This document shows positions 15,878 through 47,682 of a DNA stretch of 47,682 nt, piece after piece (positions within the stretch are counted from its first letter, which is position 1; each line of letters starts with the position of its first letter). The notes below the pieces were generated by a model. It made no database searches, was not told the DNA's origin, and saw only the letters and a list, made by a program, of their open reading frames with translations. The stretch is taken from positions 1 through 47,682 of the forward strand of contig NIVC01002030.1 of the NCBI GenBank assembly GCA_002269645.1, written 5' to 3'. This DNA comes from Macrostomum lignano. Its lineage: Eukaryota. Made by a program: the position numbers and the translations under genes.

Positions 15878-16790
15878 CAGTGCACTCTAAAAAAGGCATT
15901 CAATAGGCATTAATCTCGTATTGGTCCCTTGTTCGTCACATGCGATTGTTGTGCTAACATTGCATAACACAGCCAAGAGCCACACTCGGATAAGCCCTAT
16001 ACCTTTTCAAAGGGAATTATCACTTCGGAATATTTATATACAAGCAAGTGTTAATTGCGCAATCTTTATTGAGCTGTCCTCGCGGAAAATCTCTCAACAA
16101 AAATAATAGCATAGATTATTACGCAATCGTGAGTTGCCTAAAATTGATGGTAAATACGAAAATACCGAATGAGCAGCCGCGGTTATCGCATCTGAAAAGT
16201 TCGGTTCTGGTTTAGTTAATACTGCCGGCCCGGGAGTGGAAAGGTGAGAGAATAGGAGATGAGAGATGAGAGATAAGAGAAAAGAGGAGAGGCAAGAGAT
16301 AGGATGATAAAAAGATAGAGATAGATAGAAAAGATAGCAGTAGCGGATTTGGACGAGCTTGATTTTTTACTTTTTCTTTAGGTAATACAATAGGATATAG
16401 GGTAATGTTGGGAATGGAATTGGGTATAATGTTGGGAATATAGGATACAGCCAACGTGAGGAATAGAAAATAAATATATTTATAAAATAACTGCTGTGCA
16501 TATGCTGGGCTGACCTATAAGAACTGCTTCAAACTTCTTCGTTTATTTGTTTCTTAATAAGATATTGTCCATCGTCTCTTGTCACTTCGCTTACATTTTA
16601 CCAGCCTCTGATTAATCCAATTCGTGTCTAAAGCTATACAGGCCTACCTTTGTATCTTCAATCGATCTACTTTTTCAGTACCGGTTCCACTTTCTCCACA
16701 CTCTCAATTATACTTTCTCCACATTCTCAATTATACTTTCTTCACACTCTTAATCTAACTTATCTACCATCCGAATCTATTTCTCCACTC

Positions 16791-19700: not shown

Positions 19701-19945
19701 GGATCTACTTTCCACTTACAGGATCTACTTTCCACTTACAGGATCTACTTTCCACTTACAGGATCTACTTTCCACTTACAGGATCTACTTTCCACTTACA
19801 GGATCTACTTTCCACTTACAGGATCTACTTTCCACTTACAGGATCTACTTTCCACTTACAGGATCTACTTTCCACTTACAGGATCTACTTTCCACTTACA
19901 GGATCTACTTTCCACTTACAGGATCTACTTTCCACTTACAGGATC
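16791..19945. repeat. 20-bp minisatellite, ~3.15 kb
   Basis: Unit acaggatctactttccactt with recurring 14-bp, 19-bp (atgggtctactttccactc) and longer (catcggtctacttttcactcaccggatctacgagt) variants. Confidence 0.97.
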
Positions 19946-20256
19946 AATCTTATACTTACTTTCCCACAAGCTCTGTCTGCTTTCCTCTCTTCCCTTGCCT
20001 CTGAACACTTGAAGAGTCATGCATCATCGATGAAATTTCAAATCCTGAATTTCCAACAGCTGCAGCTTCTATAATTCTCTTTCCAAATCAAAATACTCTC
20101 CTACCGAGTAGGTGGCGCAGCAGCCATCAAGCAAACTGCGCGTTGAAATTGTAGCAAAATGCGCGCATGGGAAACCCTTACCGCACAGCATTACCGTATC
20201 TGCACCTGTTTGCGGGAATACTCATAAAGAATTGAAGCGCAATTATACTTTATTTT

Positions 20257-21531
20257 ATCTACTGCACGATGGATCTGTATATCTACTGCACCATCTGTAC
20301 ATCTACTGCACCATCTGTATATTCTACTGCACCATCTGTATATCTACTGCACCTTCTGTATATCTACTGCACCATCTGTATGTCTACTGCACCATCTGTA
20401 CATCTACTGCACCATCTGTATACCTACTGCACCTTCTGTATGTCTACTGCACCATCTGTACATCTACTGCACCATCTGTATACCTACTGCACCTTCTGTA
20501 TATCTACTGCACCATCTGTATGTCTACTGCACCATCTGTACATCTACTGCACCATCTGTATACCTACTGCACCTTCTGTATATCTACTGCACCATCTGTA
20601 TGTCTACTGCACCATCTGTACATCTACTGCACCATCTGTATACCTACTGCACCATCTGTATGTCTACTGCACCATCTGTATATTCTACTGCACCATCTGT
20701 ATATCTACTGCACCATCTGTATATCTACTGCACCTTCTGTATATCTACTGCACCATCTGTATGTCTACTGCACCATCTATATAAATATCTACTGCACCAT
20801 CTGTATACCTACTGCACCATCTGTATATCTACTGCACCATCTGTAAATCTACTGCACCGTCTGTATATTCTACTGCACCATCTGTATATCTACTGCACCT
20901 TCTGTATATCTACTGCACCATCTGTAAATCTACTGCACCATCTGTATATCTACTGCACCATCTGTATATCTACTGCACCTTCTGTAAATCTACTGCACCG
21001 TCTGTATATTCTACTGCACCATCTGTATATCTACTGCACCATCTGTAAATCTACTGCACCATCTGTATATCTACTGCACCATCTGTATATCTACTGCACC
21101 TTCTGTATATCTACTGCACCATCTGTATATCTACTGCACCATCTGTATATCTACTGCACCATCTGTATATCTACTGCACCATCTGTAAATCTACTGCACC
21201 GTCTGTATATTCTACTGCACCATCTGTATATCTACTGCACCTTCTGTATATCTACTGCACCATCTGTATGTCTACTGCACCATCTATATAAATATCTACT
21301 GCACCATCTGTATATCTACTGCACCTTCTGTAAATCTACTGCACCGTCTGTATATTCTACTGCACCATCTGTATATTCTACTGCACCATCTGTACATCTA
21401 CTGCACCATCTGTATATTCTACTGCACCATCTGTACATCTACTGCACCATCTGTATATCTACTGCACCATCTGTATATCTACTGCACCATCTGTATATCT
21501 ACTGCACCATCTGTATATCTACTGCACCATC
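20257..21531. repeat. 20-bp minisatellite
   Basis: Unit atatctactgcaccatctgt, ~63 copies. Confidence 0.96.
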
Positions 21532-22044
21532 GAAATCTCATTGTTAATACATCAAATTCTTACTGTTAATTCCTCGAAGTCTTTCAATGTAGAGAATCAT
21601 TGTGTCCAATCAAAGTTACATGGATATTACACACGCCGCGCTTCCGTAATTGTTAATACAGTCTGCATTGCAACTGACTTTTTCTAGCTCAAAAAGTTGC
21701 TATTAGAATTTGATTTTGCATAAATTTTGTTTACAAACTTTTGACGTCCTTATTTTGAGTTTCTAAACTATACAAAATTTACAATGCTTATGGCAAATCA
21801 AAGCAAATTTTGAAGTTGCTACAGTAAGGGGAATTTCGGAAATGAGATTCTTATGCATGATAGGGAGTTTCTCTGTTTCTACTGTAATTTTATGTTTCTG
21901 AAATTTCAAAGGTATGATTTTATTCAAGTGCAGAAATCAATAATTTTCGGACAAATTTCTGTTACATATTGTCGGCACATGGTGCAAGGATTTCTAGGGA
22001 ATCAAAATGTCATGGATTATCTTTATCTTCGATTTTTGTATGCA

Positions 22045-31841: not shown

Positions 31842-33870
31842 TCTCTACCCTCCCTGGCCTCTCTACCCTCTCTGGCCTCTCTACCCTCCCTGGCCTCTCT
31901 ACCCTCTCTGGCCTCTCTACCCTCCCTGCCCTCTCTACCCTCCCTGGCCTCTCTACCCTCCCTGCCCTCTCTACCCTCTCTGGCCTCTCTACCCTCCCTG
32001 GCCTCTCTACCCTCCCTGGCCTCTCTACCCTCCCTGGCCTCTCTACCCTCTCTGGCCTCTCTACCCTCCCTGGCCTCTCTACCCTCCCTGGCCTCTCTAC
32101 CCTCCCTGCCCTCTCTACCCTCCCTGGCCTCTCTACCCTCCCTGCCCTCTCTACCCTCCCTGGCCTCTCTACCCTCCCTGCCCTCTCTACCCTACCTGGC
32201 CTCTCTACCCTCCCTGGCCTCTCTACCCTCCCTGCCCTCTCTACCCTACCTGGCCTCTCTACCCTCCCTGGCCTCTCTACCCTACCTGGCCTCTCTACCC
32301 TCCCTGGCCTCTCTACCCTCCCTGCCCTCTCTACCCTCCCTGGCCTCTCTACCCTCCCTGCCCTCTCTACCCTACCTGGCCTCTCTACCCTCCCTGGCCT
32401 CTCTACCCTACCTGGCCTCTCTACCCTCCCTGGCCTCTCTACCCTCCCTGCCCTCTCTACCCTCCCTGCCCTCTCTAACCTCTCTGGCCTCTCTACCCTC
32501 CCTGCCCTCTCTACCCTCCCTGCCCTCTCTACCCTCCCTGCCCTCTCTACCCTCCCTGCCCTCTCTACCCTCCCTGCCCTCTCTACCCTCCCTGCCCTCT
32601 CTACCCTCCCTACCCTCTCTACCCTCCCTGGCCTCTCCACCCTCCCTGCCCTCTCTACCCTCCCTGCCCTCTCTACCCTCCCTGTCCTCTCTACCCTCCC
32701 TGTCCTCTCTACCCTCCCTGCCCTCTCTACCCTCCCTGTCCTCTCTACCCTCCCTGCCCTCTCTACCCTCCCTGCCCTCTCTACCCTCCCTGTCCTCTCT
32801 ACCCTCCCTGCCCTCTCTACCCTCCCTGCCCTCTCTACCCTCCCTGCCCTCTCTACCCTCCCTGTCCTCTCTACCCTCCCTGCCCTCTCTACCCTCCCTG
32901 CCCTCTCTACCCTCCCTGTCCTCTCTACCCTCCCTGCCCTCTCTACCCTCCCTGCCCTCTCTACCCTCCCTGCCCTCTCTACCCTCCCTGCCCTCTCTAC
33001 CCTCCCTGGCCTCTCTACCCTCCCTCAGGCTCCCTGCCCTCTTTACCCGCCCTGCCCCCTCTCTACCCTCCCTGGCCTCTCTACCCTCCCTGCCCTCTCT
33101 ACCCTACCTGGCCTCTCTACCCTCCCTGGCCTCTCTACCCTACCTGGCCTCTCTACCCTCCCTGGCCTCTCTACCCTCCCTGCCCTCTCTACCCTCCCTG
33201 CCCTCTCTAACCTCTCTGGCCTCTCTACCCTCCCTGCCCTCTCTACCCTCCCTGCCCTCTCTACCCTCCCTGCCCTCTCTACCCTCCCTGCCCTCTCTAC
33301 CCTCCCTGCCCTCTCTACCCTCCCTGCCCTCTCTACCCTCCCTACCCTCTCTACCCTCCCTGGCCTCTCCACCCTCCCTGCCCTCTCTACCCTCCCTGCC
33401 CTCTCTACCCTCCCTGTCCTCTCTACCCTCCCTGTCCTCTCTACCCTCCCTGCCCTCTCTACCCTCCCTGTCCTCTCTACCCTCCCTGCCCTCTCTACCC
33501 TCCCTGCCCTCTCTACCCTCCCTGTCCTCTCTACCCTCCCTGCCCTCTCTACCCTCCCTGCCCTCTCTACCCTCCCTGCCCTCTCTACCCTCCCTGTCCT
33601 CTCTACCCTCCCTGCCCTCTCTACCCTCCCTGCCCTCTCTACCCTCCCTGTCCTCTCTACCCTCCCTGCCCTCTCTACCCTCCCTGCCCTCTCTACCCTC
33701 CCTGCCCTCTCTACCCTCCCTGCCCTCTCTACCCTCCCTGGCCTCTCTACCCTCCCTCAGGCTCCCTGCCCTCTTTACCCGCCCTGCCCCCTCTCTACCC
33801 TCCCTGCCCTCTCTACCCTCCCTGTCCTCTCTACCCTCCCTGTCCTCTCTACCCTCCCTCTCTACCCTCC
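31842..33870. repeat. 18-bp minisatellite, ~110 copies, with a 732-bp higher-order duplication
   Basis: Unit ctctctaccctccctg(cc/gc/tc). Rare variants recur at a 732-bp offset (32477/33209; 33027/33759). Confidence 0.96.
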
Positions 33871-35012
33871 GCACCCCTTGCCTCCATTCTCTCTACACTC
33901 TCGCCACTCTTTACCCTTCCCTTTAATGCTTAAGTGTCGCCTTTGCGCCCACCCAGACCGAAGGAAAAAGTACAAGACCAGAAAACTCGACTATCAGGAA
34001 ATTCTCTCCTTAGTCCCCTTACATAATATTTCTCTAATCTCTATAGATAATCTCCTTTCTCATAGCAGGCCTTCCTTGGTCAGATATTACTTTAATAGCA
34101 ACAACAACTAAGCGTAGCAACTAACTCATGCAGTTTTGCTTCACGACCCCATGCAGCTCATTAAATAAATTGTTCGTTTGCTTAGCAAAGTTTAGCAGTT
34201 GCCCAGCGCCTATACTAAAGTAAGCGAAAAAATTTATGAAAATTATAGTAGCCCAGCTATGCTGCATGGTGCCTTGAAGTATAGAAGGAAATGTAAATGA
34301 CTGACAATCTCTGTAAGTCCTATAGTTGCACAGGCCATCGACTATTATTAAGGCTGTATAGTGTTTCAATTCAAGCTTCTTTTTTTGCGGAATTTTCTGC
34401 TTTTTAAAGCCGCGGTTATATAAGCTAGGCTAATGTATAGTTTGTTAGCCACAGCTGCAGTCGGCAACTGTTGGAAGTAGAGTTGGCCATGGAGAGCGGG
34501 GCGGGGGTGAGAGGGTCTGCCCGAGTCCTGCTCCTGCATATGCTGCATACCTTACTAAGTATTGATCCGGTGGGGGGCACAGGAGGTTCACAGCCTGTCT
34601 CTCCTTTTCGCTCAGTTCGCCCCAACAGGGCCACCGTAATTCCGCACTGCATGCCTCTGCCCTGCAGCCTGTGCCAAACTCTACCCCATGGTGTACACTG
34701 CACTATGCTAAATGTACACCCGCTGCTGCTGCAGTTCCTAACCCTGCTCTTCTCTGCCTGTCCCTAATCCTCCCTCTCTTAGCTGTCCCGCGGCCTCTCT
34801 CTCTCGCCCTGGCCTTGCTTCATTTTTAGTTTTCTAGTATATTCCATCCTTCTTTCGCGCTCTCTCTCTCCCCCTCTCTCTCTCTGCTTTGGTGGGCCTA
34901 CTGCATAAACCAATACTAATGTTATACGGCTTGTCCTTATGACATTCTTTAAACTGACTAACTAGAAATGCTGTGCATGCAATTGAGTAAAGTTTAATTC
35001 AAATATTTCCTC

Positions 35013-35290
35013 ATGGAGGGCCCTACAGGGACATCAGGGCGGTGACCATGGCCCTCTCGGGTCATGGCTGTTTTGTCTGGCATCGTTACCTCCAGGGGAA
35101 ATCCGCAGTGAGGAATGCCCTTTCTGCCTCTCGATGGTGTTGAGAATGCGGAGCGCTTCATCTGTGAATGCCCCGCCTTTACTCAGGACAGGCTCACTTT
35201 TCAGGCCCGAGAATCTTTGCCAGCTCGTCCGCTACAGAAGGGCTACCGGGTGAGCGACCATCCACCTCCTGGACTCTCCGGAGGGGAACC
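35013..35290 (+). mobile_element. Decayed 3' fragment of an I/R1-group LINE ORF2 (C-terminal Cys/His zinc-knuckle region)
   Basis: Three frames join to YRDIRAVTMALSGHGCFVWHRYLQGKS../EECPFC../ENAERFICECPAFTQDRL..QLVRYRRATG*, matching the LTGH...CxxC...ExxEHxxCxCP pattern (the His position reads Arg here). Confidence 0.65.
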
Positions 35291-35966
35291 GCGCTGCGGA
35301 CGCCGGCACCACCGGACGCCGCAAAACCGCAGGGGCGGCGAAAGGGCGAAATTGATCGAGAAATGTTTCATATATTATAAGCAATGGTATGTGGTGTATG
35401 TAGAACTTGGGATTTGGAGGGCTTTGAGAATCTTTTAGAGTCTATACTTATTTTAGTCGATGCAGTCAAAGTCTATAATAATCCGAAATCTCCCGTCAAT
35501 CTCCTCGATTTTTCTCCCGAACCGTTCGTTCTATACAGCCGCTCCCCGCACTGCAAGAGATGACTCAGCGCTCGCCTCCGCAGCTTTTGGGGAAATTGGG
35601 ATTTGGGGAATGCAGTCGCGTAATCCCCTCGGGGGGAGAGGGGAGGAGTGGGGTAGGTTAGGTATACTGAAACTCCCCCACTACAGAGCCTACTCCCCTC
35701 CCCGCTTAGCCCGCCTTCCCCACCAAGCCAGCCTTGCATGCACAGCAGAGCCCATCGAGAAATTCGGACGCATGCAGGGGGGGGGACACAGACACATACA
35801 GCTGGGGGAAGGCAGTCAATATTATATTTTTCCTCAAGTGGATTCCGCTCCGCTAAGTAGTATGTGGGCAGTCCGGTTTTATAAAGTTTCTTGCCATTTT
35901 CATGTGCGACTGCTGGGTGAGCTCAGATCACAGTTAGTAGCCTTAGGGATGACATTGTCATTGGAA

Positions 35967-36465
35967 GGGGTGACAGTAGCGCTAGATGGGGTGACAGTAG
36001 CGCTAGATGGGGTGACAGTTGCGCTAGATGGGGTGACAGTTGCGCTAGATGGGGTGACAGTTGCGCTAGATGGGGTGACAGTAGCGCTAGATGGGGTGAC
36101 AGTAGCGCTAGATGGGGTGACAGTAGCGCTAGATGGGGTGACAGTAGCGCTAGATGGGGTGACAGTAGCGCTAGATGGGTTGACAGTAGCGCTAGATGGG
36201 GTGACAGTTGCGCTAGATGGGGTGACAGTTGCGCTAGATGGGGTGACAGTTGCGCTAGATGGGGTGACAGTTGCGCTAGATGGGTGACAGTTGCGCTAGA
36301 TGGGGTGACAGTTGCGCTAGATGGGGTGACAGTTGCGCTAGATGGGGTGACAGTTGCGCTAGATGGGGTGACAGTTACGCTAGATGGGGTGACAGTTGCG
36401 CTAGATGGGGTGACAGTTACGCTAGATGGGGTGACAGTTGCGCTAGATGGGGTGACAGTAGCGCT
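35967..36465. repeat. 21-bp minisatellite
   Basis: Unit ggggtgacagt(a/t)gcgctagat, ~23 copies. Confidence 0.96.
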
Positions 36466-36506
36466 CTAAAGCTGACGTTAGACCCAGCTGGATTGAAAAC
36501 GTCGCC

Positions 36507-36755
36507 AGGGGTGCTAGATAGGTGACAGGGGTGCTAGATAGGTGACAGGGGTGCTAGATAGGTGACAGGGGTGCTAGATAGGCGACAGGGGGTGCTAGAT
36601 AGCTGACAGGGGTGCTAGATAGGCGACAGGGGTGCTAGATAGCTGACAGGGGTGCTAGATAGGCGACAGGTGTGCTAGATAGGCGACAGGGGTGCTAGAT
36701 AGGCGACAGGGGTGCTAGATAGGCGACAGGGGTGCTAGATAGGCGACAGGGGTGC
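36507..36755. repeat. 20-21-bp minisatellite related to the 21-mer
   Basis: Unit agg(t/c)gacaggggtgctagat, ~12 copies; shares gacag...gctagat. Confidence 0.92.
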
Positions 36756-37148
36756 CTATGTTGAGATCTGGCAGGGGCAATCAAGAAACTGGAGACATTC
36801 CGCCAAAACTCATGGACCAGGTAGGAATATTTGATTTGAGAATTAATAAATAGTAATTCTATTTGTAGCCAACAGTTTAAATTTCCCATCCCTATGAAGC
36901 ATCGAATTCAGCTCTTGGGAAAACCAATATGCTGACATGGCCTCAATATACTTTTAATAACCTCTATGCTTCATCTCGCAGACATGAGACAGTCCAAGCT
37001 CCTCCATTGACTCATACGCACCCATATAACAGGGACTACATAGCAGGAAGAAAAGAAATTAACCAAAAAATATTAAACTATAAAAATCTTTAAAAAACTA
37101 AAACTCCCTGTTAGCGATCGAAAAAAAAATTATAAAATCGTGGTGCTA

Positions 37149-37476
37149 ATCTGTGTCAGATGCTGTAAGTGTCCATCTGTGTCAGATGCTGTAAGTGTCC
37201 ATCTGTGTCAGATGCTGTAAGTGTCCATCTGTGTCAGATGCTGTAAGTGTCCATCTGTGTCAGATGCTGTAAGTGTCCATCTGTGTCAGATGCTATAAAT
37301 GTCCATCTGTGTCAGATGCTGTAAATGTCCATCTGTGTCAGATGCTGTAAGTGTCCATCTGTGTCAGATGCTGTAAGTGTCCATCTGTGTCAGATGCTGT
37401 AAGTGTCCATCTGTGTCAGATGCTGTAAGTGTCTATCTTTGTCAGATGTTGTAAGTGTCATCCGTGTCAGATGCTG
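37149..37476. repeat. 26-bp minisatellite
   Basis: Unit atctgtgtcagatgctgtaagtgtcc, ~12 copies. Confidence 0.95.
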
Positions 37477-37998
37477 CAAATTCCCAGTGAAACAGTAAAG
37501 CGACCAAATGATTAAAAATAGTTGAGGAGTAAAAGAGGCCAAACGGGATCGAAAGGGAAAATTGGCAAGCTGTGGCGGCGGGGGGTTCGCAAGGATCGGG
37601 TTGGGCGCGGGGGATTTCGGGGGGGGGGACAAAGACCTATTTTTTGTCTCCGGCCCTCCCGTCAGCCCCGCTAAAGCTTCCTCCTGCGCAATATTTGGCT
37701 TTTAGAGAGGGGAGAAGGGGCTAAATCAAGTGGGGAAGGCGCGGGCGAAGACCGGAATGGAATTATCCCATAGGTCCTGTATGCTAAATATGTACGAGCG
37801 TATATTGGGGGAGAAAAATCCCCACGAGAATTGGAGCTCAGCTCATTATGCACCAACAAGCTGGCTTCATTTGTGCCTGGCTTTGATAGAGCTAGATGGA
37901 AACGGGCCGCCTGCTGAAGCCGAATTAACTTTGCTGATGCTGTGCGTGAGCGGATTGCGGCTTGGATTTCCCTTGCGCTGCGGTGCAATTTCTGCCGC

Positions 37999-38386
37999 CT
38001 GTCTGCTTCTGTGCCGCCTGTCTGCTTCTGTGCTGCCTGTCTGCTTCTGTCTGCAATTCTGTCTGTCTGCAATTTTGTCTGTCTGCAATTCTGTCTGTCT
38101 GCAATTCTGTCTGTCTGCAATTCTGTATGTCTGCAATTCTGTATGTCTGCAATTCTGTATGTCTGCAATTCTGTATGTCTGCAATTCTGTCTGCCTGCGA
38201 TTCTGTCTGCCTGCAATTCTGTATGTCTGCAATTCTGTCTGTCTGCAATTCTGTATGTCTGCAATTTTGTCTGCCTGCAATTCTGTCTGTCTGCAATTCT
38301 GTCTGTCTGCAATTCTGTATGTCTGCAATTCTGTCTGTCTGCAATTCTGTCTGTCTGCAATTCTGTCTCTCTGCAATTCTGTCTCT
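37999..38386. repeat. 16-bp minisatellite
   Basis: Unit gcaattctgt(c/a)tgtct, ~21 copies plus a degenerate 5' part. Confidence 0.93.
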
Positions 38387-39845: not shown

Positions 39846-40193
39846 GCTCTAACTATATGAACGACAATTCTGTGTAGAATTCGGTTAGTTTAAATCAGTC
39901 TAGGTAAGTGGTGTACGCGCAGTCTTATGCGCAGCAACTTCAGAAAAGACTTACTATGAAGTTTTAAAAAAATTACCGAAAATTTTACTGCTATCCTTCC
40001 CACTCTCTACAGCATAGAAAAAAACAGTTTGCGTAGGCCTAGACAAAAACTAGCTTTCATGCGCAAATAGTTCCACTTATGTCAGTAGAGAGATTGGCAT
40101 GCCAGGAACGAATGCTTTATGAAAACGAATGTTTAATTAAAGCGGTTACAGAATTTTCTAGATAATAAAAGCTACCCAGAGATGATTTACTTC

Positions 40194-40254
40194 AACTCTG
40201 GTTTCTCTTCATTCCACGATTAAATCTTTCGCCTTTTACTAAAGATTTCCGTGG
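40194..40254 (+). ncRNA. U5: U5 spliceosomal snRNA gene, 5' half (interrupted)
   Basis: AACTCTGGTTTCTCTTCATTCCACGATTAAATCTTTCGCCTTTTACTAAAGATTTCCGTGG matches the metazoan U5 5' domain. Invariant loop 1 GCCTTTTAC lies at 40231-40239, closed by AAATCTTT/AAAGATTT. Confidence 0.93.
40241..40254 (+). repeat. 14-bp target-site duplication AAAGATTTCCGTGG (copies 40241-40254, 40844-40857, 47297-47310)
   Basis: The identical U5-derived 14-mer is present at all three array junctions. Confidence 0.85.
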
Positions 40255-40843
40255 TGATTTCCGAAGTGACCACGCTCTGAAACGCAACTAATAAAACTAA
40301 ACTTGCTGCCTGAGACAGAGATCGGTTGATCAGTCATTAGGACTGATTAGGTAATCTCTATGTCTCCTCGCGTTTCTTTTTACAATTTTCCCAACTGTGT
40401 TTTTTACCCAACTGCTCTACAAATATCACTAATTGCTTTTTTACACCTTTACTATATTCATTCTATTTTTACAACTAAATTCAAATATGCGCTATTGCAT
40501 TTTTAATCTCTATTTTTTTTTACTTAAATGTCTTGCTTTTACTCTCAATAGGCCTTCAAATATCTAGCACGTATTTTTTAGATGTCCTGTTTTTATTAGA
40601 TCCCTTCTTTGTGTGGGATTTCCCTCCCCTCTTTTTTATCCCCAAATGCGTGCAAAATACTGCAAAATATTGAAAAATAGTTTTATATATTTATATTTTT
40701 AATTTCAATATTCGTATTAAATATTCAAATCGAAATCTTGTAAATATTTTTAATTCTTTCGATAAAATACAAAATATAACTGCGGCAGAGTTCTTCGGAA
40801 CTGACCCGCGCCGGTTTCGACGGCACCTCGTTTTAACAACAAA
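40255..40843 (+). mobile_element. 5'-truncated copy (3' UTR only) of the U5-associated LINE
   Basis: 40263-40843 is near-identical to 46724-47296. It ends ttttaacaacaaaaaa, has an 8-nt junction insert tgatttcc and is flanked by the 14-mer. Confidence 0.85.
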
Positions 40844-40912
40844 AAAGATTTCCGTGGAGGGATACCCTTAGGAGAATTCTCTAGTTTTTGCAGGCCTTTC
40901 CTAGAAAGGCTT
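40844..40912 (+). ncRNA. U5: U5 snRNA 3' half at the head of the full-length LINE copy
   Basis: GATTTCCGTGGAGGGATAC completes stem Ib against host GTTTCTCTTCA. Sm-like AGTTTTTG at 40883-40890; terminal stem-loop AGGCCTTTC-CTA-GAAAGGCTT at 40892-40912. Confidence 0.8.
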
Positions 40913-41135
40913 ATTAGAAATAGAATAGTTTAGACTAGCCTAGCTTAGCTCTTAAAAGTACTTTAGTTAGCCTTCCATTCCACTGTACATTTGTTTTTAT
41001 CTCTACTCTACCCCACCCCTAGTCTTATCTTGCAGTCGCCCCACCCCTCTCAGCGAGCGCACTTTGTGTGCCTCCTGACTCATTAGTTAGTTGTAGTTTA
41101 GGTTTAGTTTGAGTGTACCCAAATAATCACGCCAT

Positions 41136-43839
41136 ATGGCTGCAAATCGCGCCAGCGCTAAAAAGATGGACTGCCGGCCCTCTCTCGAGCACCGGTATCG
41201 TCCGAACGAAGCCTACGGTCGCCAGCTTCTTGGACTGACGCCGACAGCTGAGCCATCGACTGCGAGCCCGCCGCCAGCAGGCCTGATGCGAGCTCGACGC
41301 AGTCTGGAAGGCCGCCACTCGATCAGCCCACCGGCCGGCGAGCTCTTGCGCAACGCAGAGGAGATCCTGCGAGAGAATGAGCAGCTGCCGGAGGCTGCAG
41401 GCGCAGAGGCAGAGCAGCGCATGTCTCTCGACTGCGACGAGCCAGGCCAGACAAGCGCCCTGCCATCCAACGAGGCCGCAGCAACCACCGAGCCACCAAC
41501 TGCCGAGTCCAGCGAGCTCAGTGCGGCAGCGGCAGCGCCGACGTCTGAGGAGCGCCAGCAATCGGCTGCAGACCAGGCCTCGACGCTGCCAAAGCCCCCT
41601 GCCGAGCAACTGGACGCTGACATCAGTCAAATCATCTTCCCTGATGAGCCTGACTTGACTGACTGTCAGCAGACGATCTACGCTAGCGACAGCACCATCA
41701 TCTATGCGCCCAAGTTCCTGAGCGAGGTCGCGGACCAAGTCTACGAGCGCCTGATCACCGACCTGCTGCCTCAAGCCTTTCAGCATCGTCCGAGTGAGCA
41801 GCGCCGCGTCTACTGGATCGGCCCGTCGTACACCTACAGCGGGGTTGAGCTGAAGGAAAATCTAAACTGGCATCAGGTAATTGAAGACATTCGTGACTTC
41901 ATTTACCATGATACCCAGTTCGATGTCCCGAAGTTCAACTCCGTGTTGGTGAACTTCTACACCGAGCCGGGAGACCGGATTCCCTGGCACTCGGACGATG
42001 AGGATGAGCTCGGCGACAGGCCGACGATCGCGACCGTGTCCTTCGGTGCTGAGCGGCTGTTCATGCTGCGCCGTCGGGACGGCAACGTGACGCACCGCTT
42101 TCCAACGCTGCCAGGCTCGCTGATTCTGATGGCAGGAAACTGCCAGAAACGCCTGCAGCACCAGGTGCCCGCCGCCCACTCTCAGAATGGCGTCCGCATC
42201 TCGCTAACATTCCGTGTCACCAAGCCGGAGCTGCGGCGCAAGCGAGCTCTGCCGGATGACCCGACCTACAGCCAGCCGCTAAACGGCGGCCCATTCGGCG
42301 ACGACCAAGGCGGTCGGGACGACGACCAAGGCGGCCACGACGACGACCAGGGCGGCCGGGGCGACGACAGGCCCCAGGAGCGGCAGGCGACGGCGACGCG
42401 AGACCGCGAAGGCGATCGGGGTCGGCGCGGCCGTGGCGGCCACCAGCGAGGCAGGCGAGGAGGTCGCGGCGCGGCGTCCGGTGCGGCGGCGGCTTCGGCG
42501 GCTTCCTGGCCGGCCGGTGCGGCGGCGGCTTCGGCGACAAGCGCGCAGGCGGCTGCGGCAGCGCGGCCCTACGCGCAGGTTGCGGCGCGCCCTGCGCCGC
42601 CCAGAAGGCCCCAGGCTGCCATCCCGCCGATCGTTTTGAGGTGCACCGGGACGCGGCCAACAAGCTGATGCAGTTCGTTGCCTGGCTGCAGACCAACTTT
42701 GCCGGCGAAGCTAGAGCCGTCAACACTGCGCCGATGGCGAATCAGCCGGCCTATCTCGTGTTCCCAGCGTCGGAGCGGGACTACAACGTCTTCCTGGGCG
42801 GCGCGCTGCGCGAGGAGAAGCTGCTCGAGCATCCCGTAAAGCGCCGTCCAGCCCGAGCCCGACCGCTGGACAACAGAACAGGGCCCGACAGAGTGCAGCA
42901 GCAGCCGGTACGCACCTTTGTCGCTACTGAGGTGCCCCTCGCGTTCTCGGAGGCTGACTTCGCGACCCTGTTGCGCGACACGCTCAAGCTGGACATTGTC
43001 AGCGTCCACAGAATCCGAGCCAGAGCGACTGGGAAGGCAACCCAGTTCGTGCGCATCTTCACAAAGTCGGCGATGACCTACGAGAAGTGCCTCCGCGATG
43101 GCATCTGCACCGACTTCTTGAAGTTCAACTGCGAGGACAGCCGCACAGACGAGCCGGTCCGCGCTCTGCAATGCCAGCGCTGCCAGGAGTTCGGCCACCG
43201 CGCTGCCAGTGTCGGGGGCAGCAGCGCTGCCGGATTTGCGGCGGCCAGCATTCCTGGAAGGAGTGCCAGCACGAGGGCCCAGCGGTCTGCGCCAACTGCG
43301 GCGGCTCGCACCGAACCACCAGTCGAGCCTGCACCGTCGCCAAGGCGGAGCACGACAAGGCGACCAGAGCGGCTGCTGAGGCCAAAGCCGCGGCGCGAGC
43401 TGCGGAAGCTGCGGCCGCTGCTGCCCCAGTGTCAAGTGAGACCGACGACGCCGCCGCCGACGACGACTCCGACAGCGGCTGGCTGATCCGCCGAGGCAGG
43501 CGCACGGTGCCGGTACCCGCCGCGATCCGGCCGCTTGTCATCGTGACCGATGATGCCAGGAGCGCTCCGGCGGCAGAGACCGAGTCTGATGTCAATGCGA
43601 CTGCTCCGTCAGCTGATGCCGGCCAGGCGGTGCAGCTGCAGCTTAGTGACTTTATGTCGGTGGTGAGCATGCTGTTGCCCCTGATCACCCGCTCTCTGAC
43701 TCAAGTGGTTGTGCAGGCCCTGTCCCGACCGCCTGGGGAGGTCCTCACTGTGGAATCAACCAGTAAAATGGTTGAGGACATTGTGCGGGCTGCACTCCAG
43801 GAAGTGCCGGGCATGGCTGGCATGACCACTGAGTCCTAG
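41136..43839 (+). CDS. LINE ORF1: AlkB 2OG-Fe(II) dioxygenase + RGG-rich linker + gag-like region with three Cys/His zinc knuckles (2 frameshifts)
   Basis: ORFs 41136-42668, 42641-43486 and 43087-43839 join if one base is added at ~42648-42650 (G-run) and at ~43206 (C). Motifs: WHSDDE, PYAQVAA..IPPIVL, CQRCQEFGHRAAQC, CRICGGQHSWKEC, CANCGGSHRTTSRAC. Confidence 0.85.
41697..42215 (+). CDS. AlkB-family (ALKBH2/3-like) 2OG-Fe(II) dioxygenase domain within ORF1
   Basis: FNSVLVNFY..GD.I.WHSDDE..LG..PTIATVSFGAER.F...GSLILM.G..Q...QHQVP...RISLTFR. HxD at 41988-41996, distal His at 42159, R-x5-R at 42195-42215. Confidence 0.93.
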
Positions 43840-43925
43840 TCTCAGGCAGCTAAACTCAAGACTTGAATTGAAACTTCAGTGCGTTAACTGTAGACTCAAA
43901 CAATCAAACCACAGCCCTGAAGATT

Positions 43926-46658
43926 ATGCATTTAAACTGCAGGGGATTCAACCCGAAAATCAGAGAGCTGACACAGTGGGTCGTCAGTCAGGAGCTAGAC
44001 ATTGCCCTCTTCTCTGAGACCATTCTCAAAAGTTGTCACACTGTCCAGATTCCCGGGTACTCCATCATTCGGTATGATACCCCGCAAGTCAAACGCGGGC
44101 TTCTCCTTGCCCACTCTCCTCGCGTCAAACTCACAAATGTGCGCTTGCAGTATGACAATGTCAACCATGAAGCCATCTCTTGCACCGTGAGCTTGTCTGA
44201 CAACTCTGGTCCTGACTTCAATCTTGCTCTGGTGTACAGGTCTCCAGCACCGTATCATCTGAACCTGAACCTACTCAAAAATCTTCTCTCCGTAGGCGCA
44301 GTGTGCTCATGGGTGACCTCAATGCCAGACACCGCTTCCTCGGGGTGACAGCAGCAACAACATGGCTGGCTACCAGCTGCACGACTGGCTGTCTGAGGGC
44401 CCCACCTCGCCCACCATTCTCAATCAAGCCGGTCAGTTCACCAGACTGGCCACCAAAAACGGGCTGATTTCTAGGAATGTCTTGGACCTCGCCCTGGCCA
44501 CTGAGGACTTTCTCCCATTTGTGCAGGACTTTGAGGTGGGTCCTGACCTGGGCAGTGACCACTTACCTATAATCCTCACGCTCAATATTCAGTCGAAGAA
44601 ATGGGCTGGTCCCCCCAGACCCAAAAACTTCTCAAAAACAAACTGGGACGAGTTCAGACTCAAAATCAGTGAAGCTTTGAGCTCAGATCAGAATATTAAA
44701 TTATCAAATGCTGACCAAATCAATGCCGAAGTGGATCACATCACAAAGGCCATTCACACCGTGATTGACTCCACAGTACCAGACTGTGGTGCCAAAAACG
44801 CCCTACCCAAGTACATCCTCGACCTGATCAAAGAGCGCAGACGACTCAGACGCCTCTTCTTCAGCACACGGGATCAAAATTTCAAAACCCAAGCAAACCA
44901 GCTCGCAAATCGCATAAAGAGAGAAATTAACTCCTTCCAGAATGGAAAGCTCACCAAAGTCTGTGAGAGTATTGTTGAAAACAGCAAGAACAAGAAAGTG
45001 AAGAATTTCTGGCATGACACTAAAAAGCTGATGGGCAAATTTAAGCCAACCTCATCCCCAGCCTCACCCTGGGTCAAACAACTGCGCACACAGATCTGGA
45101 GAAGGCTAACCTTCTAGCCGAGACTCTGGACTCAAAGATGCGCCCAGTCCCTTCCACATGCGAACAGCTCAAACGTGAGGTGGCCGATGTGGCACAGCTC
45201 ACCTCATTCTACCCCGTTCCTGAGGGAATCGAACCCATTGAGACCCACCCACTTGATGCTGCATTCTCTGTGGCAGACACAGTGTGGGAACTGGAGCACC
45301 TCAGGCCTGATGGAGCACCCGGGCTGGACAAGATTCCCAACTGCGTCCTCAAGCTGGGCTTAGAGGGGTGGCAATCACGAGACTCACTAACCTCTTCAAC
45401 GCCTGCTACGGTCGAGGGATTTTCCCCAGCGCCTGGAAGAAAGCTGTGGTGACAATGATCCCCAAGCCGGACAAACCGCCCGAACACCCCAACTCCTACA
45501 GACCAATCAGCCTGACCTCATGTCTGGGCAAAGTGTTTGAGAAGCTTATAGCAAAAAGACTCACCAAGCACCTTGAGGATAATAAGACCCTAGGAGATGA
45601 CCAATGCGCCTACCGCAAAATTCACTCCACGTATGACAACCTGTGCCGTCTGGCACAAGATGTCATGGTAGCAAAGTGCAAAGCTAAAAAGTCCGCTGCA
45701 GTCTTCCTGGATGCAGAGGCAGCTTTTGACTCCACCTGGCACGACAAGATCAGGCATAGCATGCTCACCGATGGTTTTCCACCTATGCTCATGCGAATCC
45801 TGTCTGACTACCTGCGAGACAGACAGATCCAGGTTCGAATCGAGGGGGCCCTAAGCGATCCCCACACCATCCAGGCTGGCGTCCCTCAGGGAGGCATTCT
45901 GAGCCCTCTCCTGTACCTCCTCTTCGTCAGCTCAATGCCGACTCCCACCATCTCAAGCGTCAAACGCAGTCAATTCGCAGACGACATGGCCGTCTGGGCC
46001 TCAGCAGACACCTTTGCGGGGCTCCGAACATCCCTTCAAAGCTACCTCAGACGAGTCTTTGACTGGTGCGGTAAACAAGGCATTAGACTGAATGCCGGTA
46101 AAAGCAAAGCAATCGCTTTCAACTACAAACCCACTAGGCGCATGGACTTGCGACCCAAACTGTATCTGGGGACACTGAGGTTCCGTACTGTCAGGAGGTG
46201 AAATTCCTGGGTGTCCTCCTTGACCAGAGCCTCTGCCTGAACAAACATGTGGACAACATGGCAGATACCAGCAGAGCCATTGTAATGTCACTGTGCAGAA
46301 TTGCAAAAATGACTAAGCTGAGTAGCACCACCCTCAGAATGCTGTACAGGGCATACGGAGAAAGCGCTCTCACCTACGGAGCGCCAATCCTGAGCCAAAT
46401 TGTGCGACTAACCAAATCAAATTGCAGAAAATTCAAAACCTGGCTCTCCGTATCTGCTATGGTGTGCCATCCTACATCAGCATTGAATACCTGCACAAGC
46501 TGGCAGGTATGCCGATGCTCGCAGACAGGGTCAAGCAGCTGGGGGTGGCTTGGCTGCTCAAGATGAGGGCAGCCAAGCTCCACAGCTTCCACATTGAGCC
46601 GGAAGCCCCTCGGGCTCCGGGCCGAACCCCGTCCTCAATGTCCTCTGGGATGCCATGA
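43926..46658 (+). CDS. LINE ORF2: AP-like endonuclease + reverse transcriptase (about 6 frameshifts); no RNase H recognised
   Basis: APE: HLNCRG, LFSET, GDLNARH, LDLAL, GSDHLP. RT: APGLDKIP, WKKAVVTMIPKPDK..YRPISLTSCLGKVFEKLI, FLDAEAAFDSTWH, GVPQGGILSPLLY, QFADD, LNAGKS, KFLGVLLD. Jockey-like tail QKIQNLALR..G.P.YI..LH..AG. Confidence 0.92.
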
Positions 46659-47296
46659 GGCGTCGGGAAAGAAACAGGGGAATCCCACCCCAGGGTTAGG
46701 CTGGCTACCAGCCTTCCAAACCGGAAGTGACCACGCTCTGAAACGCAACTAATAAAACTAAACTTGCTGCCTGAGACAGAGATCGGTTGATCAGTCATTA
46801 GGACTGATTAGGTAATCTCTATGTCTCCTCGCGTTTCTTTTTACAATTTTCCCAACTGTGTTTTTTACCCAACTGCTCTACAAATATCACTAATTGCTTT
46901 TTTACACCTTTACTATATTCATTCTATTTTTACAACTAAATTCAAATATGCGCTATTGCATTTTTAATCTCTATTTTTTACTTAAATGTCTTGCTTTTAC
47001 TCTCAATAGGCCTTCAAATATCTAGCACGTATTTTTTAGATGTCCTGTTTTTATTAGATCCCTTCTTTGTGTGCGGATTTCCCTCCCTCTTTTTTATCCC
47101 CAAATGCGTGCAAAATACTGCAAAATATTGAAAAATAGTTTTATATATGTATTTTTAATTTCAATATTCGTATTAAATATTCAAATCGAAATCTTGTAAA
47201 TATTTTTAATTCTTTCGATCAAATACAAAATATAACTGCGGCAGAGTTCTTCGGAACTGACCCGCGCCGGTTTCGACGGCACCTCGTTTTAACAAC

Positions 47297-47364
47297 AAAG
47301 ATTTCCGTGGAGGATACTCTTAGGAGAATTCTCTAGTTTTTGCAGGCCTTTCCTAGAAAGGCTT
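47297..47364 (+). ncRNA. U5: Second U5 snRNA 3' half at the head of the next LINE copy
   Basis: Near-identical to 40844-40912. Sm-like AGTTTTTG at 47335-47342, with the same terminal hairpin. Confidence 0.8.
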
Positions 47365-47682
47365 ATTGGAATAGAATAGTTTAGACTAGCCTAGCTTAGC
47401 TCTTAAAGTACTTTAGTTAGCCTTCCATTCCACTGTACATTTGTTTTTTATCTCTACTCTACCCCACCCCTAGTCTTATCTTGCAGTCGCCCCACCCCTC
47501 TCAGCGAGCGCACTTTGTGTGCCTCCTGACTCATTAGTTAGTTGTTAGTTTAGTTTAGTGTGAGTGCACCCAAATAATCACGCCATATGGCTGCAAATCG
47601 CGCCAGCGCTAAAAAGATGGACTGCCGGCCCTCTCTCGAGCACCGGTATCGTCCGAACGAAGCCTACGGTCGCCAGCTTCTT
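47311..47682 (+). mobile_element. Start of a further head-to-tail copy of the same LINE (runs off the window; ORF1 ATG at 47587)
   Basis: Near-identical to 40858-41231 with scattered substitutions and indels; translates MAANRASAKKMDCRPSLEHRYRPNEAYGRQL. Confidence 0.9.

What the first reader, a model, noticed from the sequence alone, without database searches (positions are those of the whole stretch)
40194..47682. LINE that targets U5 snRNA genes and carries a U5 3' half to rebuild the gene it breaks
Seen: a U5 5' half (40194-40254, loop 1 GCCTTTTAC intact) is followed by LINE sequence. The U5 14-mer AAAGATTTCCGTGG recurs at 40844 and 47297, each time followed by a U5 3' half (stem Ib partner, Sm-like site, terminal hairpin) and then the same 5' UTR and ORF1. 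The U5 3' half therefore belongs to the repeating unit. Inference: a full-length insertion at this site restores a complete chimeric U5 fused to the retrotransposon, regenerates the target and lets the element use the snRNA promoter. Established: non-LTR elements target multicopy RNA genes (R1/R2 in rDNA; Keno and Utopia in U2). I have an unverified recollection of U5-associated LINEs in Lepidoptera, so novelty needs checking.
Basis: partly seen in the sequence, partly recalled or inferred. Interest (0 to 1): 0.95.

Follow-up and report, generated by a model that had tools for sequence, protein, structure and literature searches.

The report
U5-gene LINE that rebuilds its target
A flatworm (Macrostomum lignano) jumping gene inserts at one exact spot inside U5 spliceosomal RNA genes and has a spare U5 back half at its front end, so each insertion leaves a complete U5 gene upstream; this would explain how a parasite can live inside a small, essential gene family.

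Summary
Rfam finds a U5 5' half at 40206-40257. The 14-mer AAAGATTTCCGTGG occurs exactly three times. A ~6.45-kb LINE unit (U5 3' half, 5'UTR, ORF1, ORF2, 3'UTR) repeats in tandem until the window ends at an assembly gap.

The window is Macrostomum lignano scaffold NIVC01002030.1. Two further scaffolds hold arrays of the same unit.

- One array ends in a different, native U5 3' half, so the LINE-linked half appears to travel with the element.
- A 5'-truncated copy in the window has the 14-mer on both sides. This indicates a 14-bp target-site duplication and shows that the rebuilt U5 is still a target.
- 3' tails vary in length, (AAC)1-3, which points to separate reverse-transcription events.

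Not shown: use of the U5 promoter, function of the chimeric U5, and a genome-wide census of copies. A ~95-bp duplication model is less parsimonious but not excluded.

A Tx1-clade family with a U5 target is already on record, so U5 targeting alone is not new. I found no earlier description of a target-restoring layout. I also found none of the ALKBH3-like AlkB domain in this element's ORF1.

The parts
40113..40177 (+). U5 promoter region. Two blocks are conserved between diverged U5 loci: TGCTTTAYGAAAACGAAKGTTTMATT (about -80 to -50) and TTTCTAnATAA..AAGCTAYCC (about -38 to -16).
   Evidence: Alignment of the three U5 upstream regions. The positions resemble the PSEA/PSEB layout of Pol II snRNA promoters (general knowledge; PMC11892584). 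Function is not tested.
40193..40240 (+). U5 5' part (A): 5' stem and loop I, up to the insertion point.
   Evidence: Rfam U5 hit, 43.8 bits. From CTCTGG onward it is identical in all three loci.
40241..40254 (+). T, copy 1: AAAGATTTCCGTGG. This is a U5 segment and the target-site duplication.
   Evidence: Exact 14-mer, 3 copies in the window, 0 expected by chance.
40255..40260 (+). Six filler bases (TGATTT) at the 5' junction of the truncated copy.
   Evidence: Read directly. These bases are absent from the full-length 3'UTR.
40261..40843 (+). 5'-truncated LINE copy. It holds the 3'UTR only, with the tail ..TAACAACAAA.
   Evidence: Matches 46722-47296 at 96-100% identity. It has 2 private substitutions and lacks the private variants of L004 unit 1.
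40844..40857 (+). T, copy 2.
40858..40912 (+). LINE-linked U5 3' half (B): 3' strand of stem I, Sm-like site AGUUUUUG, terminal hairpin.
   Evidence: Best Rfam family for this stretch, 18.3 bits. The same half completes the 83.5- and 83.8-bit U5 copies in L004 and L002.
40913..40938 (+). f26: 26 nt that also follow the terminal U5 half of the S2892 array before unrelated flank begins. Probably U5 downstream flank with a 3'-box-like motif.
   Evidence: The reading as a 3' box is inference.
40939..41135 (+). LINE 5'UTR.
   Evidence: Repeated at 47390-47586. It shares the 15-mer CCACTGTACATTTGT with the 5' region of a distant AlkB-ORF1 LINE, L012.
41136..43839 (+). ORF1, 901 aa in the 7-copy consensus: ALKBH3-like AlkB dioxygenase domain, Gly/Arg-rich linker, three CCHC knuckles. 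In this copy it is broken by 1-nt deletions at 42634 and 43205.
   Evidence: Pfam PF13532, E = 1e-21. Consensus ORFs. ALKBH3 E = 4e-24. Deletions listed.
43926..46699 (+). ORF2: APE-type endonuclease and reverse transcriptase. It is 926 aa and intact in L002:12792-15572. In this copy it is broken by six 1-nt deletions (44341, 45053, 45364, 46167, 46400, 46630).
   Evidence: Pfam PF14529, PF03372 and PF00078. Deletions listed.
46700..47296 (+). LINE 3'UTR. It has a UUCG-capped stem-loop at 47238-47265 and the tail ..TAACAAC.
   Evidence: fold z-score -2.05. Tail lengths vary among copies.
47297..47310 (+). T, copy 3.
47311..47682 (+). Start of the next unit: U5 3' half 47311-47364, flank 47365-47389, 5'UTR, ORF1 ATG at 47587. 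It is cut by the scaffold gap.
   Evidence: 97% identical to 40858-41231. The run of N follows directly.

Best explanation
This is an APE-type non-LTR retrotransposon of Macrostomum lignano that is specific for one site in U5 snRNA genes.

Proposed steps (inferred from the junctions):
1. Its endonuclease nicks the bottom strand just 3' of loop I, at ..CCUUUUACU|AAAGAUUUCCGUGG.
2. It nicks the top strand 14 nt further on, which gives a 14-bp duplication (T).
3. The RNA template starts upstream of the LINE 5'UTR and includes a U5 3' half (B) plus 26 nt of U5 downstream flank.
4. The 5' end of the copy joins the target through the shared T (and A) sequence.
5. A full-length insertion therefore reads: promoter, U5 5' part, T, B, flank, LINE, T, old 3' half.

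Shown:
- An intact chimeric U5 sits upstream of the element and a dead 3' half sits downstream.
- The rebuilt gene and the downstream T both stay targets, so arrays build up.

Inferred:
- The template is a U5-LINE co-transcript from the external U5 promoter at the array head. This fits the facts but is untested.
- The chimera arose once, by template switching from the LINE RNA onto a 3'-extended pre-U5, or by one aberrant insertion in a B-type U5 gene.
For: - Same unit, same junctions. There are 8 units and 9 3' junctions on 3 scaffolds, all at the same T site. Each T that follows a LINE 3' end is followed by B plus the flank, except the last T of the L004 array.
- Heads of arrays. Contiguous full-length U5 copies run into the 5'UTR and ORF1: L002:9666-9781 at 83.8 bits and L004:1123-1238 at 83.5 bits.
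- Ends of arrays. L004 ends in T plus a different U5 3' half, B0 (GGAGAGGAACA.., Sm site AUUUGUG, its own hairpin). S2892 ends in T, B and the 26 nt, followed by unrelated flank.
- The truncated copy in the window has T on both sides and 6 filler bases at its 5' junction. Its left edge falls exactly at the end of T.
- 3' tails differ: TAAC, TAACAAC, TAACAACAAC and TAACAACAAA.
- ORF2 is intact in one copy and ORF1 is intact in the consensus. Units differ by 0.06-1.2% in substitutions. Between loci they are 2-4 times closer than the flanks are.
- Promoter blocks upstream of the U5 heads are conserved between diverged loci.
- Precedents for snRNA sequence added to the 5' end of retrocopies: U6-L1 chimeras and SINEU heads (PMC4494074).
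Against: - The three loci have collinear, paralogous upstream flanks, so they are not fully independent. The head units of L004 and S2892 share two private variants, which suggests the head unit predates the split of these loci.
- No transcript data could be reached. snRNA-type Pol II promoters normally give short transcripts that are cleaved at the 3' box.
- B has a slightly off-consensus Sm site (AGUUUUUG). No solo B-type gene was seen, so function of the chimera is unknown.
- Only annotated ORF1 copies could be traced. Copies elsewhere in the genome may have been missed.
- The closest relatives found (46-59% ORF2 identity) show no U5 at the ends that could be reached.
- The assembly is PacBio-based, the window array abuts a gap, and raw reads were not checked.
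Confidence: 0.6

Rival explanations
1. Long target-site duplication. The LINE proper starts after the 26-nt flank. The two nicks are about 95 nt apart (before T and 26 nt past the U5 end), so each insertion duplicates T, B and the flank. The U5 half is then copied from the target and not carried in the RNA.
For: It fits the S2892 array exactly: an intact U5 plus 26 nt, then 4 units, then a terminal T+B+26 nt, then native flank. Very long duplications are known for the rDNA element R9 (my recollection, not checked here). It would equally leave an intact gene upstream.
Against: The truncated copy in the window is flanked by 14 bp only. The last L004 unit has B+flank upstream but B0 downstream. 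L004 unit 1 is flanked by T-B-flank copies that differ at 4 or more of 95 positions, against under 1% divergence between units. This model therefore needs an extra recombination event and an 81-bp junction deletion.
Confidence: 0.2
2. One-off capture followed by DNA-level amplification. A single odd insertion created the U5-LINE junction once. The arrays and the three loci then arose by unequal crossing-over, gene conversion and genome duplication, and the U5 piece is not being mobilised now.
For: Upstream flanks are paralogous. M. lignano is described as a recent polyploid (abstract of PMC10733133). The head units of two loci share variants. Units within S2892 are as little as 0.06% apart.
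Against: Tail lengths differ between neighbouring units. The truncated copy has a duplication and filler bases. Arrays end in two different native contexts. Array composition differs between the closely related window and L004 loci. ORFs are intact or nearly so.
Confidence: 0.12
3. Same structure, but the element uses its own internal promoter. Transcription starts at or near T/B, as in elements whose downstream promoter sets +1. The U5 half is then only a 5' leader and the U5 promoter is not used.
For: Internal units lack any U5 promoter, yet all carry B. Internal promoters are the rule in many APE LINEs (general knowledge). A 15-nt 5'UTR motif is shared with a distant AlkB-ORF1 LINE.
Against: Every array examined is headed by a full U5 promoter and 5' half with conserved promoter blocks. 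No internal promoter was identified.
Confidence: 0.3
4. Assembly artefact. The tandem layout is a mis-join of repeats in a long-read assembly.
For: The window array runs into a run of N. All 8 frame-breaking differences in the window unit are single-base deletions, which is typical of consensus errors.
Against: The same layout occurs, without gaps, on two other scaffolds, with different numbers of units, private variants and unique flanks at both ends.
Confidence: 0.03

Closest known systems
Tx1-clade family with a U5 snRNA target (listed in Kojima 2015, PMC4494074, Fig. 3 legend)
   Same: An APE-type LINE recorded as targeting U5 snRNA genes.
   Different: Only the legend could be read. The family name, the site and the 5' structure are unknown to me. 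The present ORF2 is 926 aa, has no C-terminal zinc finger, and fits Pfam PF14529 better than PF03372. This suggests a Jockey/R1-like lineage rather than Tx1/L1, but no phylogeny was possible. No target-restoring structure is reported for the Tx1 family.
Keno (Tx1 clade) and Utopia (restriction-like endonuclease), both in U2 snRNA genes
   Same: Site-specific LINEs in a low-copy Pol II snRNA gene family, with tandem insertions. In Phytophthora, intact U2 genes lie upstream of Utopia and U2 from nucleotide 39 to the end lies downstream. That is the same head and tail pattern as here (PMC4640811).
   Different: The target is U2, not U5. The authors read the pattern as a deletion on integration within U2 arrays, not as a carried gene half. 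Utopia has a different endonuclease type.
R1 in 28S rDNA
   Same: APE LINE with CCHC knuckles in ORF1, strict site specificity, a 14-bp target-site duplication and tandem arrays (my recollection of the R1 literature).
   Different: R1 splits its target and does not restore it. Clade membership was not tested here.
R2 co-transcription with 28S rRNA
   Same: The element is expressed from the host gene's promoter as a co-transcript. This is the model proposed here.
   Different: R2 frees itself with an HDV-like ribozyme and uses a restriction-like endonuclease. No ribozyme family was detected here, and co-transcription is unproven.
U6-L1 chimeric retrocopies and SINEU heads
   Same: snRNA sequence fused to the 5' end of a retrotransposed unit, attributed to template switching (PMC4494074).
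   Different: Those are dead retrocopies or non-autonomous SINEs that carry the snRNA 5' part or the whole snRNA. Here an autonomous LINE has only the 3' half, in register with its own target site.
Integrative elements at tRNA genes (phages, genomic islands)
   Same: The mobile element carries the 3' part of its target gene, so integration rebuilds an intact gene (general knowledge).
   Different: Those are DNA elements using site-specific recombinases in prokaryotes, so the mechanism is unrelated.

Membership tests
APE-type non-LTR retrotransposon (LINE) | AP-endonuclease-like domain N-terminal to a reverse transcriptase in ORF2 | tested here: met
   PF14529 E = 2e-11, PF03372 E = 1.5e-5 and PF00078 E = 1.6e-36 in the intact 926-aa ORF2. 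Fragments of the same domains are found in the window copy.
APE-type non-LTR retrotransposon (LINE) | No LTRs; 5'-truncated copies; target-site duplication; simple-repeat or A-rich 3' tail | tested here: met
   Truncated copy at 40261-40843 flanked by the 14-mer. Tails are (AAC)1-3. The only long direct repeats are the tandem units themselves.
Target-specific LINE | Essentially all 3' junctions fall at one sequence | tested here: inconclusive
   9 of 9 3' junctions on 3 scaffolds abut AAAGATTTCCGTGG. The loci are paralogous and a genome-wide census was not possible with these tools.
Tx1 clade (includes the reported U5-targeting family) | Placement in an RT phylogeny against Repbase references | not testable with these tools
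   No reference TE library was at hand. Indirect hints against membership: ORF2 size, no C-terminal zinc finger, and the endonuclease profile preference. The PDB comparison was uninformative.
R1 clade | Placement in an RT phylogeny; site-specific APE endonuclease | not tested
   The 14-bp duplication and the three CCHC knuckles in ORF1 are compatible. The TRAS1 endonuclease is only a marginal hit (E = 0.024).
U5 spliceosomal RNA (RF00020), applied to the chimeric gene | Full-length match above the Rfam gathering score, with loop I GCCUUUUAC | tested here: met
   83.8 and 83.5 bits over model positions 1-117 for the contiguous copies. In the window the gene is interrupted: the 5' half scores 43.8 bits and the 3' half 18.3 bits.
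U5 spliceosomal RNA (RF00020), applied to the chimeric gene | Canonical Sm site, and expression and assembly into a snRNP | not testable with these tools
   The Sm-like site is AGUUUUUG (a G precedes the U run). The native B0 half has AUUUGUG. No RNA data.
R2-like co-transcribed elements | Self-cleaving (HDV-like) ribozyme at the 5' junction | tested here: not met
   No ribozyme family at E <= 10 in 40780-41250.
AlkB / ALKBH 2OG-Fe(II) dioxygenases (ORF1 domain) | HxD...H iron triad and RxxxxxR 2-oxoglutarate motif in a PF13532 fold | tested here: met
   PF13532 E = 1e-21. ALKBH3 E = 4e-24. WHSD, HQV and RISLTFR can be read in the translation. Enzyme activity is not testable here.

The most novel reading that the evidence does not exclude
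The element and the U5 gene family are coupled in three ways. First, the LINE is made as a read-through of a working chimeric U5 gene from the external snRNA promoter. Second, every insertion swaps the host gene's 3' half for the element's own functional version, complete with 3' box. The element would then spread its U5 allele through the family like a gene drive while leaving the number of working U5 genes unchanged. Third, an ALKBH3-like demethylase in ORF1 services the RNA or cDNA. The same logic may explain the intact U2 genes found upstream of Utopia in oomycetes.
Probability: 0.3. Interest if true: 0.9.

Novelty: new variant of a known kind. Interest (0 to 1): 0.75.

Why it matters
Kojima and Jurka called it a puzzle that snRNA-specific LINEs persist in gene families of only about ten copies (PMC4640811). 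An element that leaves a complete gene behind at every insertion would remove most of that cost. It would also make the puzzle directly testable, here and in the Utopia/U2 arrays.

It would be, as far as I could find, the first LINE that works like tRNA-gene integrating elements, which restore their target.

It is a natural model for target-restoring, site-specific retrotransposon insertion into a safe multicopy locus.

The ALKBH3-like domain in ORF1, shared by relatives in other samples, points to a role for nucleic-acid demethylation in the life cycle of a LINE lineage.

Tried and rejected
- **Rfam on the joined halves.** The naturally contiguous copies found in L002 and L004 replaced this test.
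- **Ribozyme search.** I looked for HDV-like and other ribozymes in the 5' leader and found none.
- **Bacterial-type promoter and terminator scan.** Uninformative for a eukaryote.
- **Relatives in other samples.** L006-L008 have 46-59% ORF2 identity, and L009-L012 are AlkB-ORF1 LINEs. None has U5 or the 14-mer in the sequence available. Most of these contigs do not clearly reach the element ends.
- **ORF1 homologue search.** It was swamped by low-complexity words and returned only 2 proteins. Cluster look-up added 2 more.
- **Clade assignment through PDB.** Not informative.
- **The truncated copy as a deletion remnant of the unit at the same position in L004.** Rejected. It lacks that unit's private variants, and its left edge coincides exactly with the end of T.
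- **The Lepidoptera lead.** The only lepidopteran paper that mentions U5 genes together with retrotransposons concerns telomerase RNA promoters.
- **The MIR8562 hit in L002.** At 58 bits against a gathering score of 211, it is a low-complexity inverted repeat and not a microRNA.

Full report
**1. What is in the window**

Rfam places a U5 snRNA 5' half at 40206-40257 (43.8 bits, gathering score 40, model positions 14-63, loop I intact). The 14-mer AAAGATTTCCGTGG (T) occurs at 40241, 40844 and 47297 and nowhere else, with none expected by chance.

After the first T come six filler bases. These are followed by 583 bp that equal the 3'UTR of the LINE further downstream (40261-40843 matches 46722-47296).

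After the second and third T comes a U5 3' half, called B here (40858-40912 and 47311-47364). U5 is the best Rfam family for that stretch, aligning the Sm-like site and terminal hairpin, although the half alone scores only 18.3 bits.

B is followed by the same 5'UTR and ORF1. The repeat period is about 6453 bp.

**2. The element**

The unit encodes two ORFs.
- ORF1 has an AlkB-type 2OG-Fe(II) dioxygenase domain (PF13532, E = 1e-21) followed by three CCHC knuckles.
- ORF2 has an APE-type endonuclease and a reverse transcriptase.

In the window copy both ORFs are broken, by eight single-base deletions relative to the majority of seven copies. In that majority consensus ORF1 is one 901-aa frame. 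One copy elsewhere has an intact 926-aa ORF2 (L002:12792-15572). The breaks may be long-read consensus errors.

The 3' end has a small UUCG-capped stem-loop and an (AAC)n tail.

**3. Source**

The 510-aa ORF1 product is annotated on NIVC01002030.1 of assembly GCA_002269645.1, at the same coordinates as in the window. Papers that cite this assembly accession are mostly about Macrostomum lignano, and NCBI names the sister proteins as M. lignano.

The window is the first 47,682 bp of that scaffold. It stops at a ~2.3-kb run of N.

**4. Other copies**

The annotated ORF1 relatives led to two more scaffolds.

- **NIVC01002892.1 ('S2892').** A contiguous full-length U5 (83.8 bits, model 1-117) runs directly into the 5'UTR and ORF1. 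Four units follow, each starting with T and B. The array ends with T, B and 26 further nt, then unrelated sequence.
- **NIVC01003829.1 (L004).** A contiguous U5 (83.5 bits) heads two units. The array ends with T followed by a different U5 3' half, B0. B0 has the human-like GGAGAGGAACA, an AUUUGUG Sm site and its own hairpin, and it aligns weakly to U5 model positions 38-117.

All eight units carry B. All nine 3' junctions are at T.

**5. How independent are the loci?**

They are not fully independent.
- The upstream flank of L004 is nearly the same as the window's (1.2-1.6% substitutions).
- The upstream flank of S2892 is collinear with it but more diverged (1.6-8%).
- Downstream flanks share nothing.
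- Units differ by 0.06-1.2%. Between loci they are 2-4 times closer than the flanks are.
- The head units of L004 and S2892 share two private variants.

The loci are therefore paralogues that already had a head unit and have changed since. This fits continued activity, but gene conversion could contribute.

**6. Mechanism**

Three readings were weighed.

- **(a) The U5 half is in the RNA template and the duplication is 14 bp.** This explains all three arrays with no extra events.
  - A B0-type gene invaded by B-carrying units gives the L004 structure.
  - A B-type gene gives S2892.
  - A 5'-truncated insertion into the rebuilt head gene gives the window. That copy has T on both sides, filler bases at its 5' junction, and a left edge exactly at the end of T.
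- **(b) Nicks about 95 nt apart duplicate T, B and the flank.** This fits S2892. It needs an ectopic recombination for L004 and an 81-bp junction deletion for the window. It also leaves L004 unit 1 flanked by 'duplicates' that differ at four or more of 95 positions.
- **(c) One capture followed by unequal crossing-over.** This is opposed by tail-length differences between neighbouring units (TAAC, TAACAAC, TAACAACAAC, TAACAACAAA) and by the truncated copy.

I favour (a) at about 0.6.

In (a) and (b) alike, an insertion leaves a complete U5 upstream: promoter, 5' part, T, B, and 26 nt that contain a motif (GAAGTYRAAWAGT) also present after B0. That motif may be a 3' box (inference).

**7. Promoter use**

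Two upstream blocks are conserved between the diverged loci, at about -80 to -50 and -38 to -16. Every array is headed by them.

Because B is copied, the template must start at or upstream of B. The U5 start site is the obvious candidate, but an internal promoter that sets +1 near T or B would do as well. No self-cleaving ribozyme was found and no transcript data could be reached.

**8. Origin (inference)**

The 26-nt boundary coincides with the point where the native flank diverges in S2892.
- A template switch from the LINE RNA onto a 3'-extended pre-U5 would create the chimera once, as proposed for U6-L1 chimeras and SINEU heads (PMC4494074).
- One aberrant insertion in a B-type gene would do the same.
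- Transcription from the U5 promoter would then make the chimera heritable.

**9. Comparison with what is known**

- snRNA-gene LINEs are known: Keno and Utopia in U2. A Tx1 family with a U5 target is listed in a figure legend (PMC4494074).
- A later paper by the same author lists only Keno, Utopia, Dada-U1 and Dada-U6 for snRNA genes (PMC4640811).
- That later paper reports intact U2 genes upstream of Utopia and U2 from nucleotide 39 to the end downstream in Phytophthora. This is the same pattern as here. The authors read it as a deletion.
- I found no report of a LINE whose unit holds the 3' half of its target.
- The clade could not be determined because no TE reference library was available and the PDB comparison was uninformative.
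- ORF2 size, the lack of a C-terminal zinc finger, the endonuclease profile preference and the 14-bp duplication point away from Tx1 and towards Jockey/R1-like elements.
- The nearest relatives found (56-59% and 46% ORF2 identity; L006-L008) show no U5 in the sequence available.

**10. Side finding**

The AlkB domain is closest to human ALKBH3 (E = 4e-24) and keeps the HxD...H and RxxxxxR motifs.

The same ORF1 architecture (AlkB plus CCHC, followed by an APE/RT ORF2) occurs in contigs from other samples: L006, L009-L011 and L012.

Literature searches found AlkB domains in plant viruses and in one orchid Ty3/Gypsy lineage, but not in LINEs.

**11. Verdict**

- Promoter use and function of the chimeric U5 are untested.
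- U5 targeting as such is not new. The target-restoring layout and the AlkB-ORF1 appear to be.
- Novelty: new variant of a known kind. Interest: 0.75.

Noticed in passing
window 41136-42668 (ORF1, aa ~223-360); also L006:2-2056, L009-L012: ORF1 of this LINE has an ALKBH3-like AlkB dioxygenase domain with intact catalytic motifs, fused to a CCHC gag-like part. The same architecture is found in related LINEs from other sequencing samples. I found no report of AlkB in LINEs.
   Followed up: partly
window 47682 / L001:16548-18865 and 18866-21533: The window ends exactly at a ~2.3-kb run of N in the scaffold. Beyond the gap lies a long 30-bp satellite (TGTTTACCTTGTAGTCAGTGAGTTTGTGTG).
   Followed up: yes
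window 1700-38400: Much of the 38 kb upstream of the U5 gene is taken up by more than 15 different minisatellite arrays with periods of 16-48 bp, including 3.2 kb of a 20-mer at 16775-19945. Many of the long ORFs listed there overlap these arrays and look like repeat artefacts. Three ORFs were scanned against Pfam: two had no hit and the third had only weak sub-threshold matches.
   Followed up: partly
L004:12115-12190: A second type of U5 3' half (B0) with human-like GGAGAGGAACA, an AUUUGUG Sm site and a different terminal hairpin. M. lignano therefore seems to have at least two U5 3'-half variants.
   Followed up: partly
window 40917-40929; L004:1244-1256 and 12186-12198; L005:16117-16129: A motif GAAGTYRAAWAGT lies 5-8 nt past the U5 end after both B and B0. 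It could be a 3' box. It is intact in the head units of L004 and S2892, throughout the S2892 array and after B0, but reads GAAATAGAATAGT in the window unit at 40844 and in the second L004 unit (the window's second unit has a related 1-nt-shorter form).
   Followed up: no
window 42634, 43205, 44341, 45053, 45364, 46167, 46400, 46630: All eight frame-breaking differences between the window unit and the majority of copies are single-base deletions. These may be long-read consensus errors rather than real decay.
   Followed up: partly
window 40985-40999; L012:256-270: The 15-mer CCACTGTACATTTGT in the 5'UTR is shared with the 5' region of a distant AlkB-ORF1 LINE from another sample (E = 0.02). 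It could be a conserved 5'UTR or promoter element, or chance.
   Followed up: no
L002:9002-9222: A weak MIR8562 match (58 bits against a gathering score of 211) upstream of the S2892 U5 gene. It is an inverted array of the ~13-nt repeat AACCCGAAATATCAC, so it is probably a low-complexity hit.
   Followed up: no
window 33030-38050 vs L002:244-5286: Several kb upstream of two different U5 loci are collinear at 92-96% identity, including an 18-bp satellite. The U5 genes seem to sit in a larger duplicated block whose downstream sides are unrelated.
   Followed up: partly
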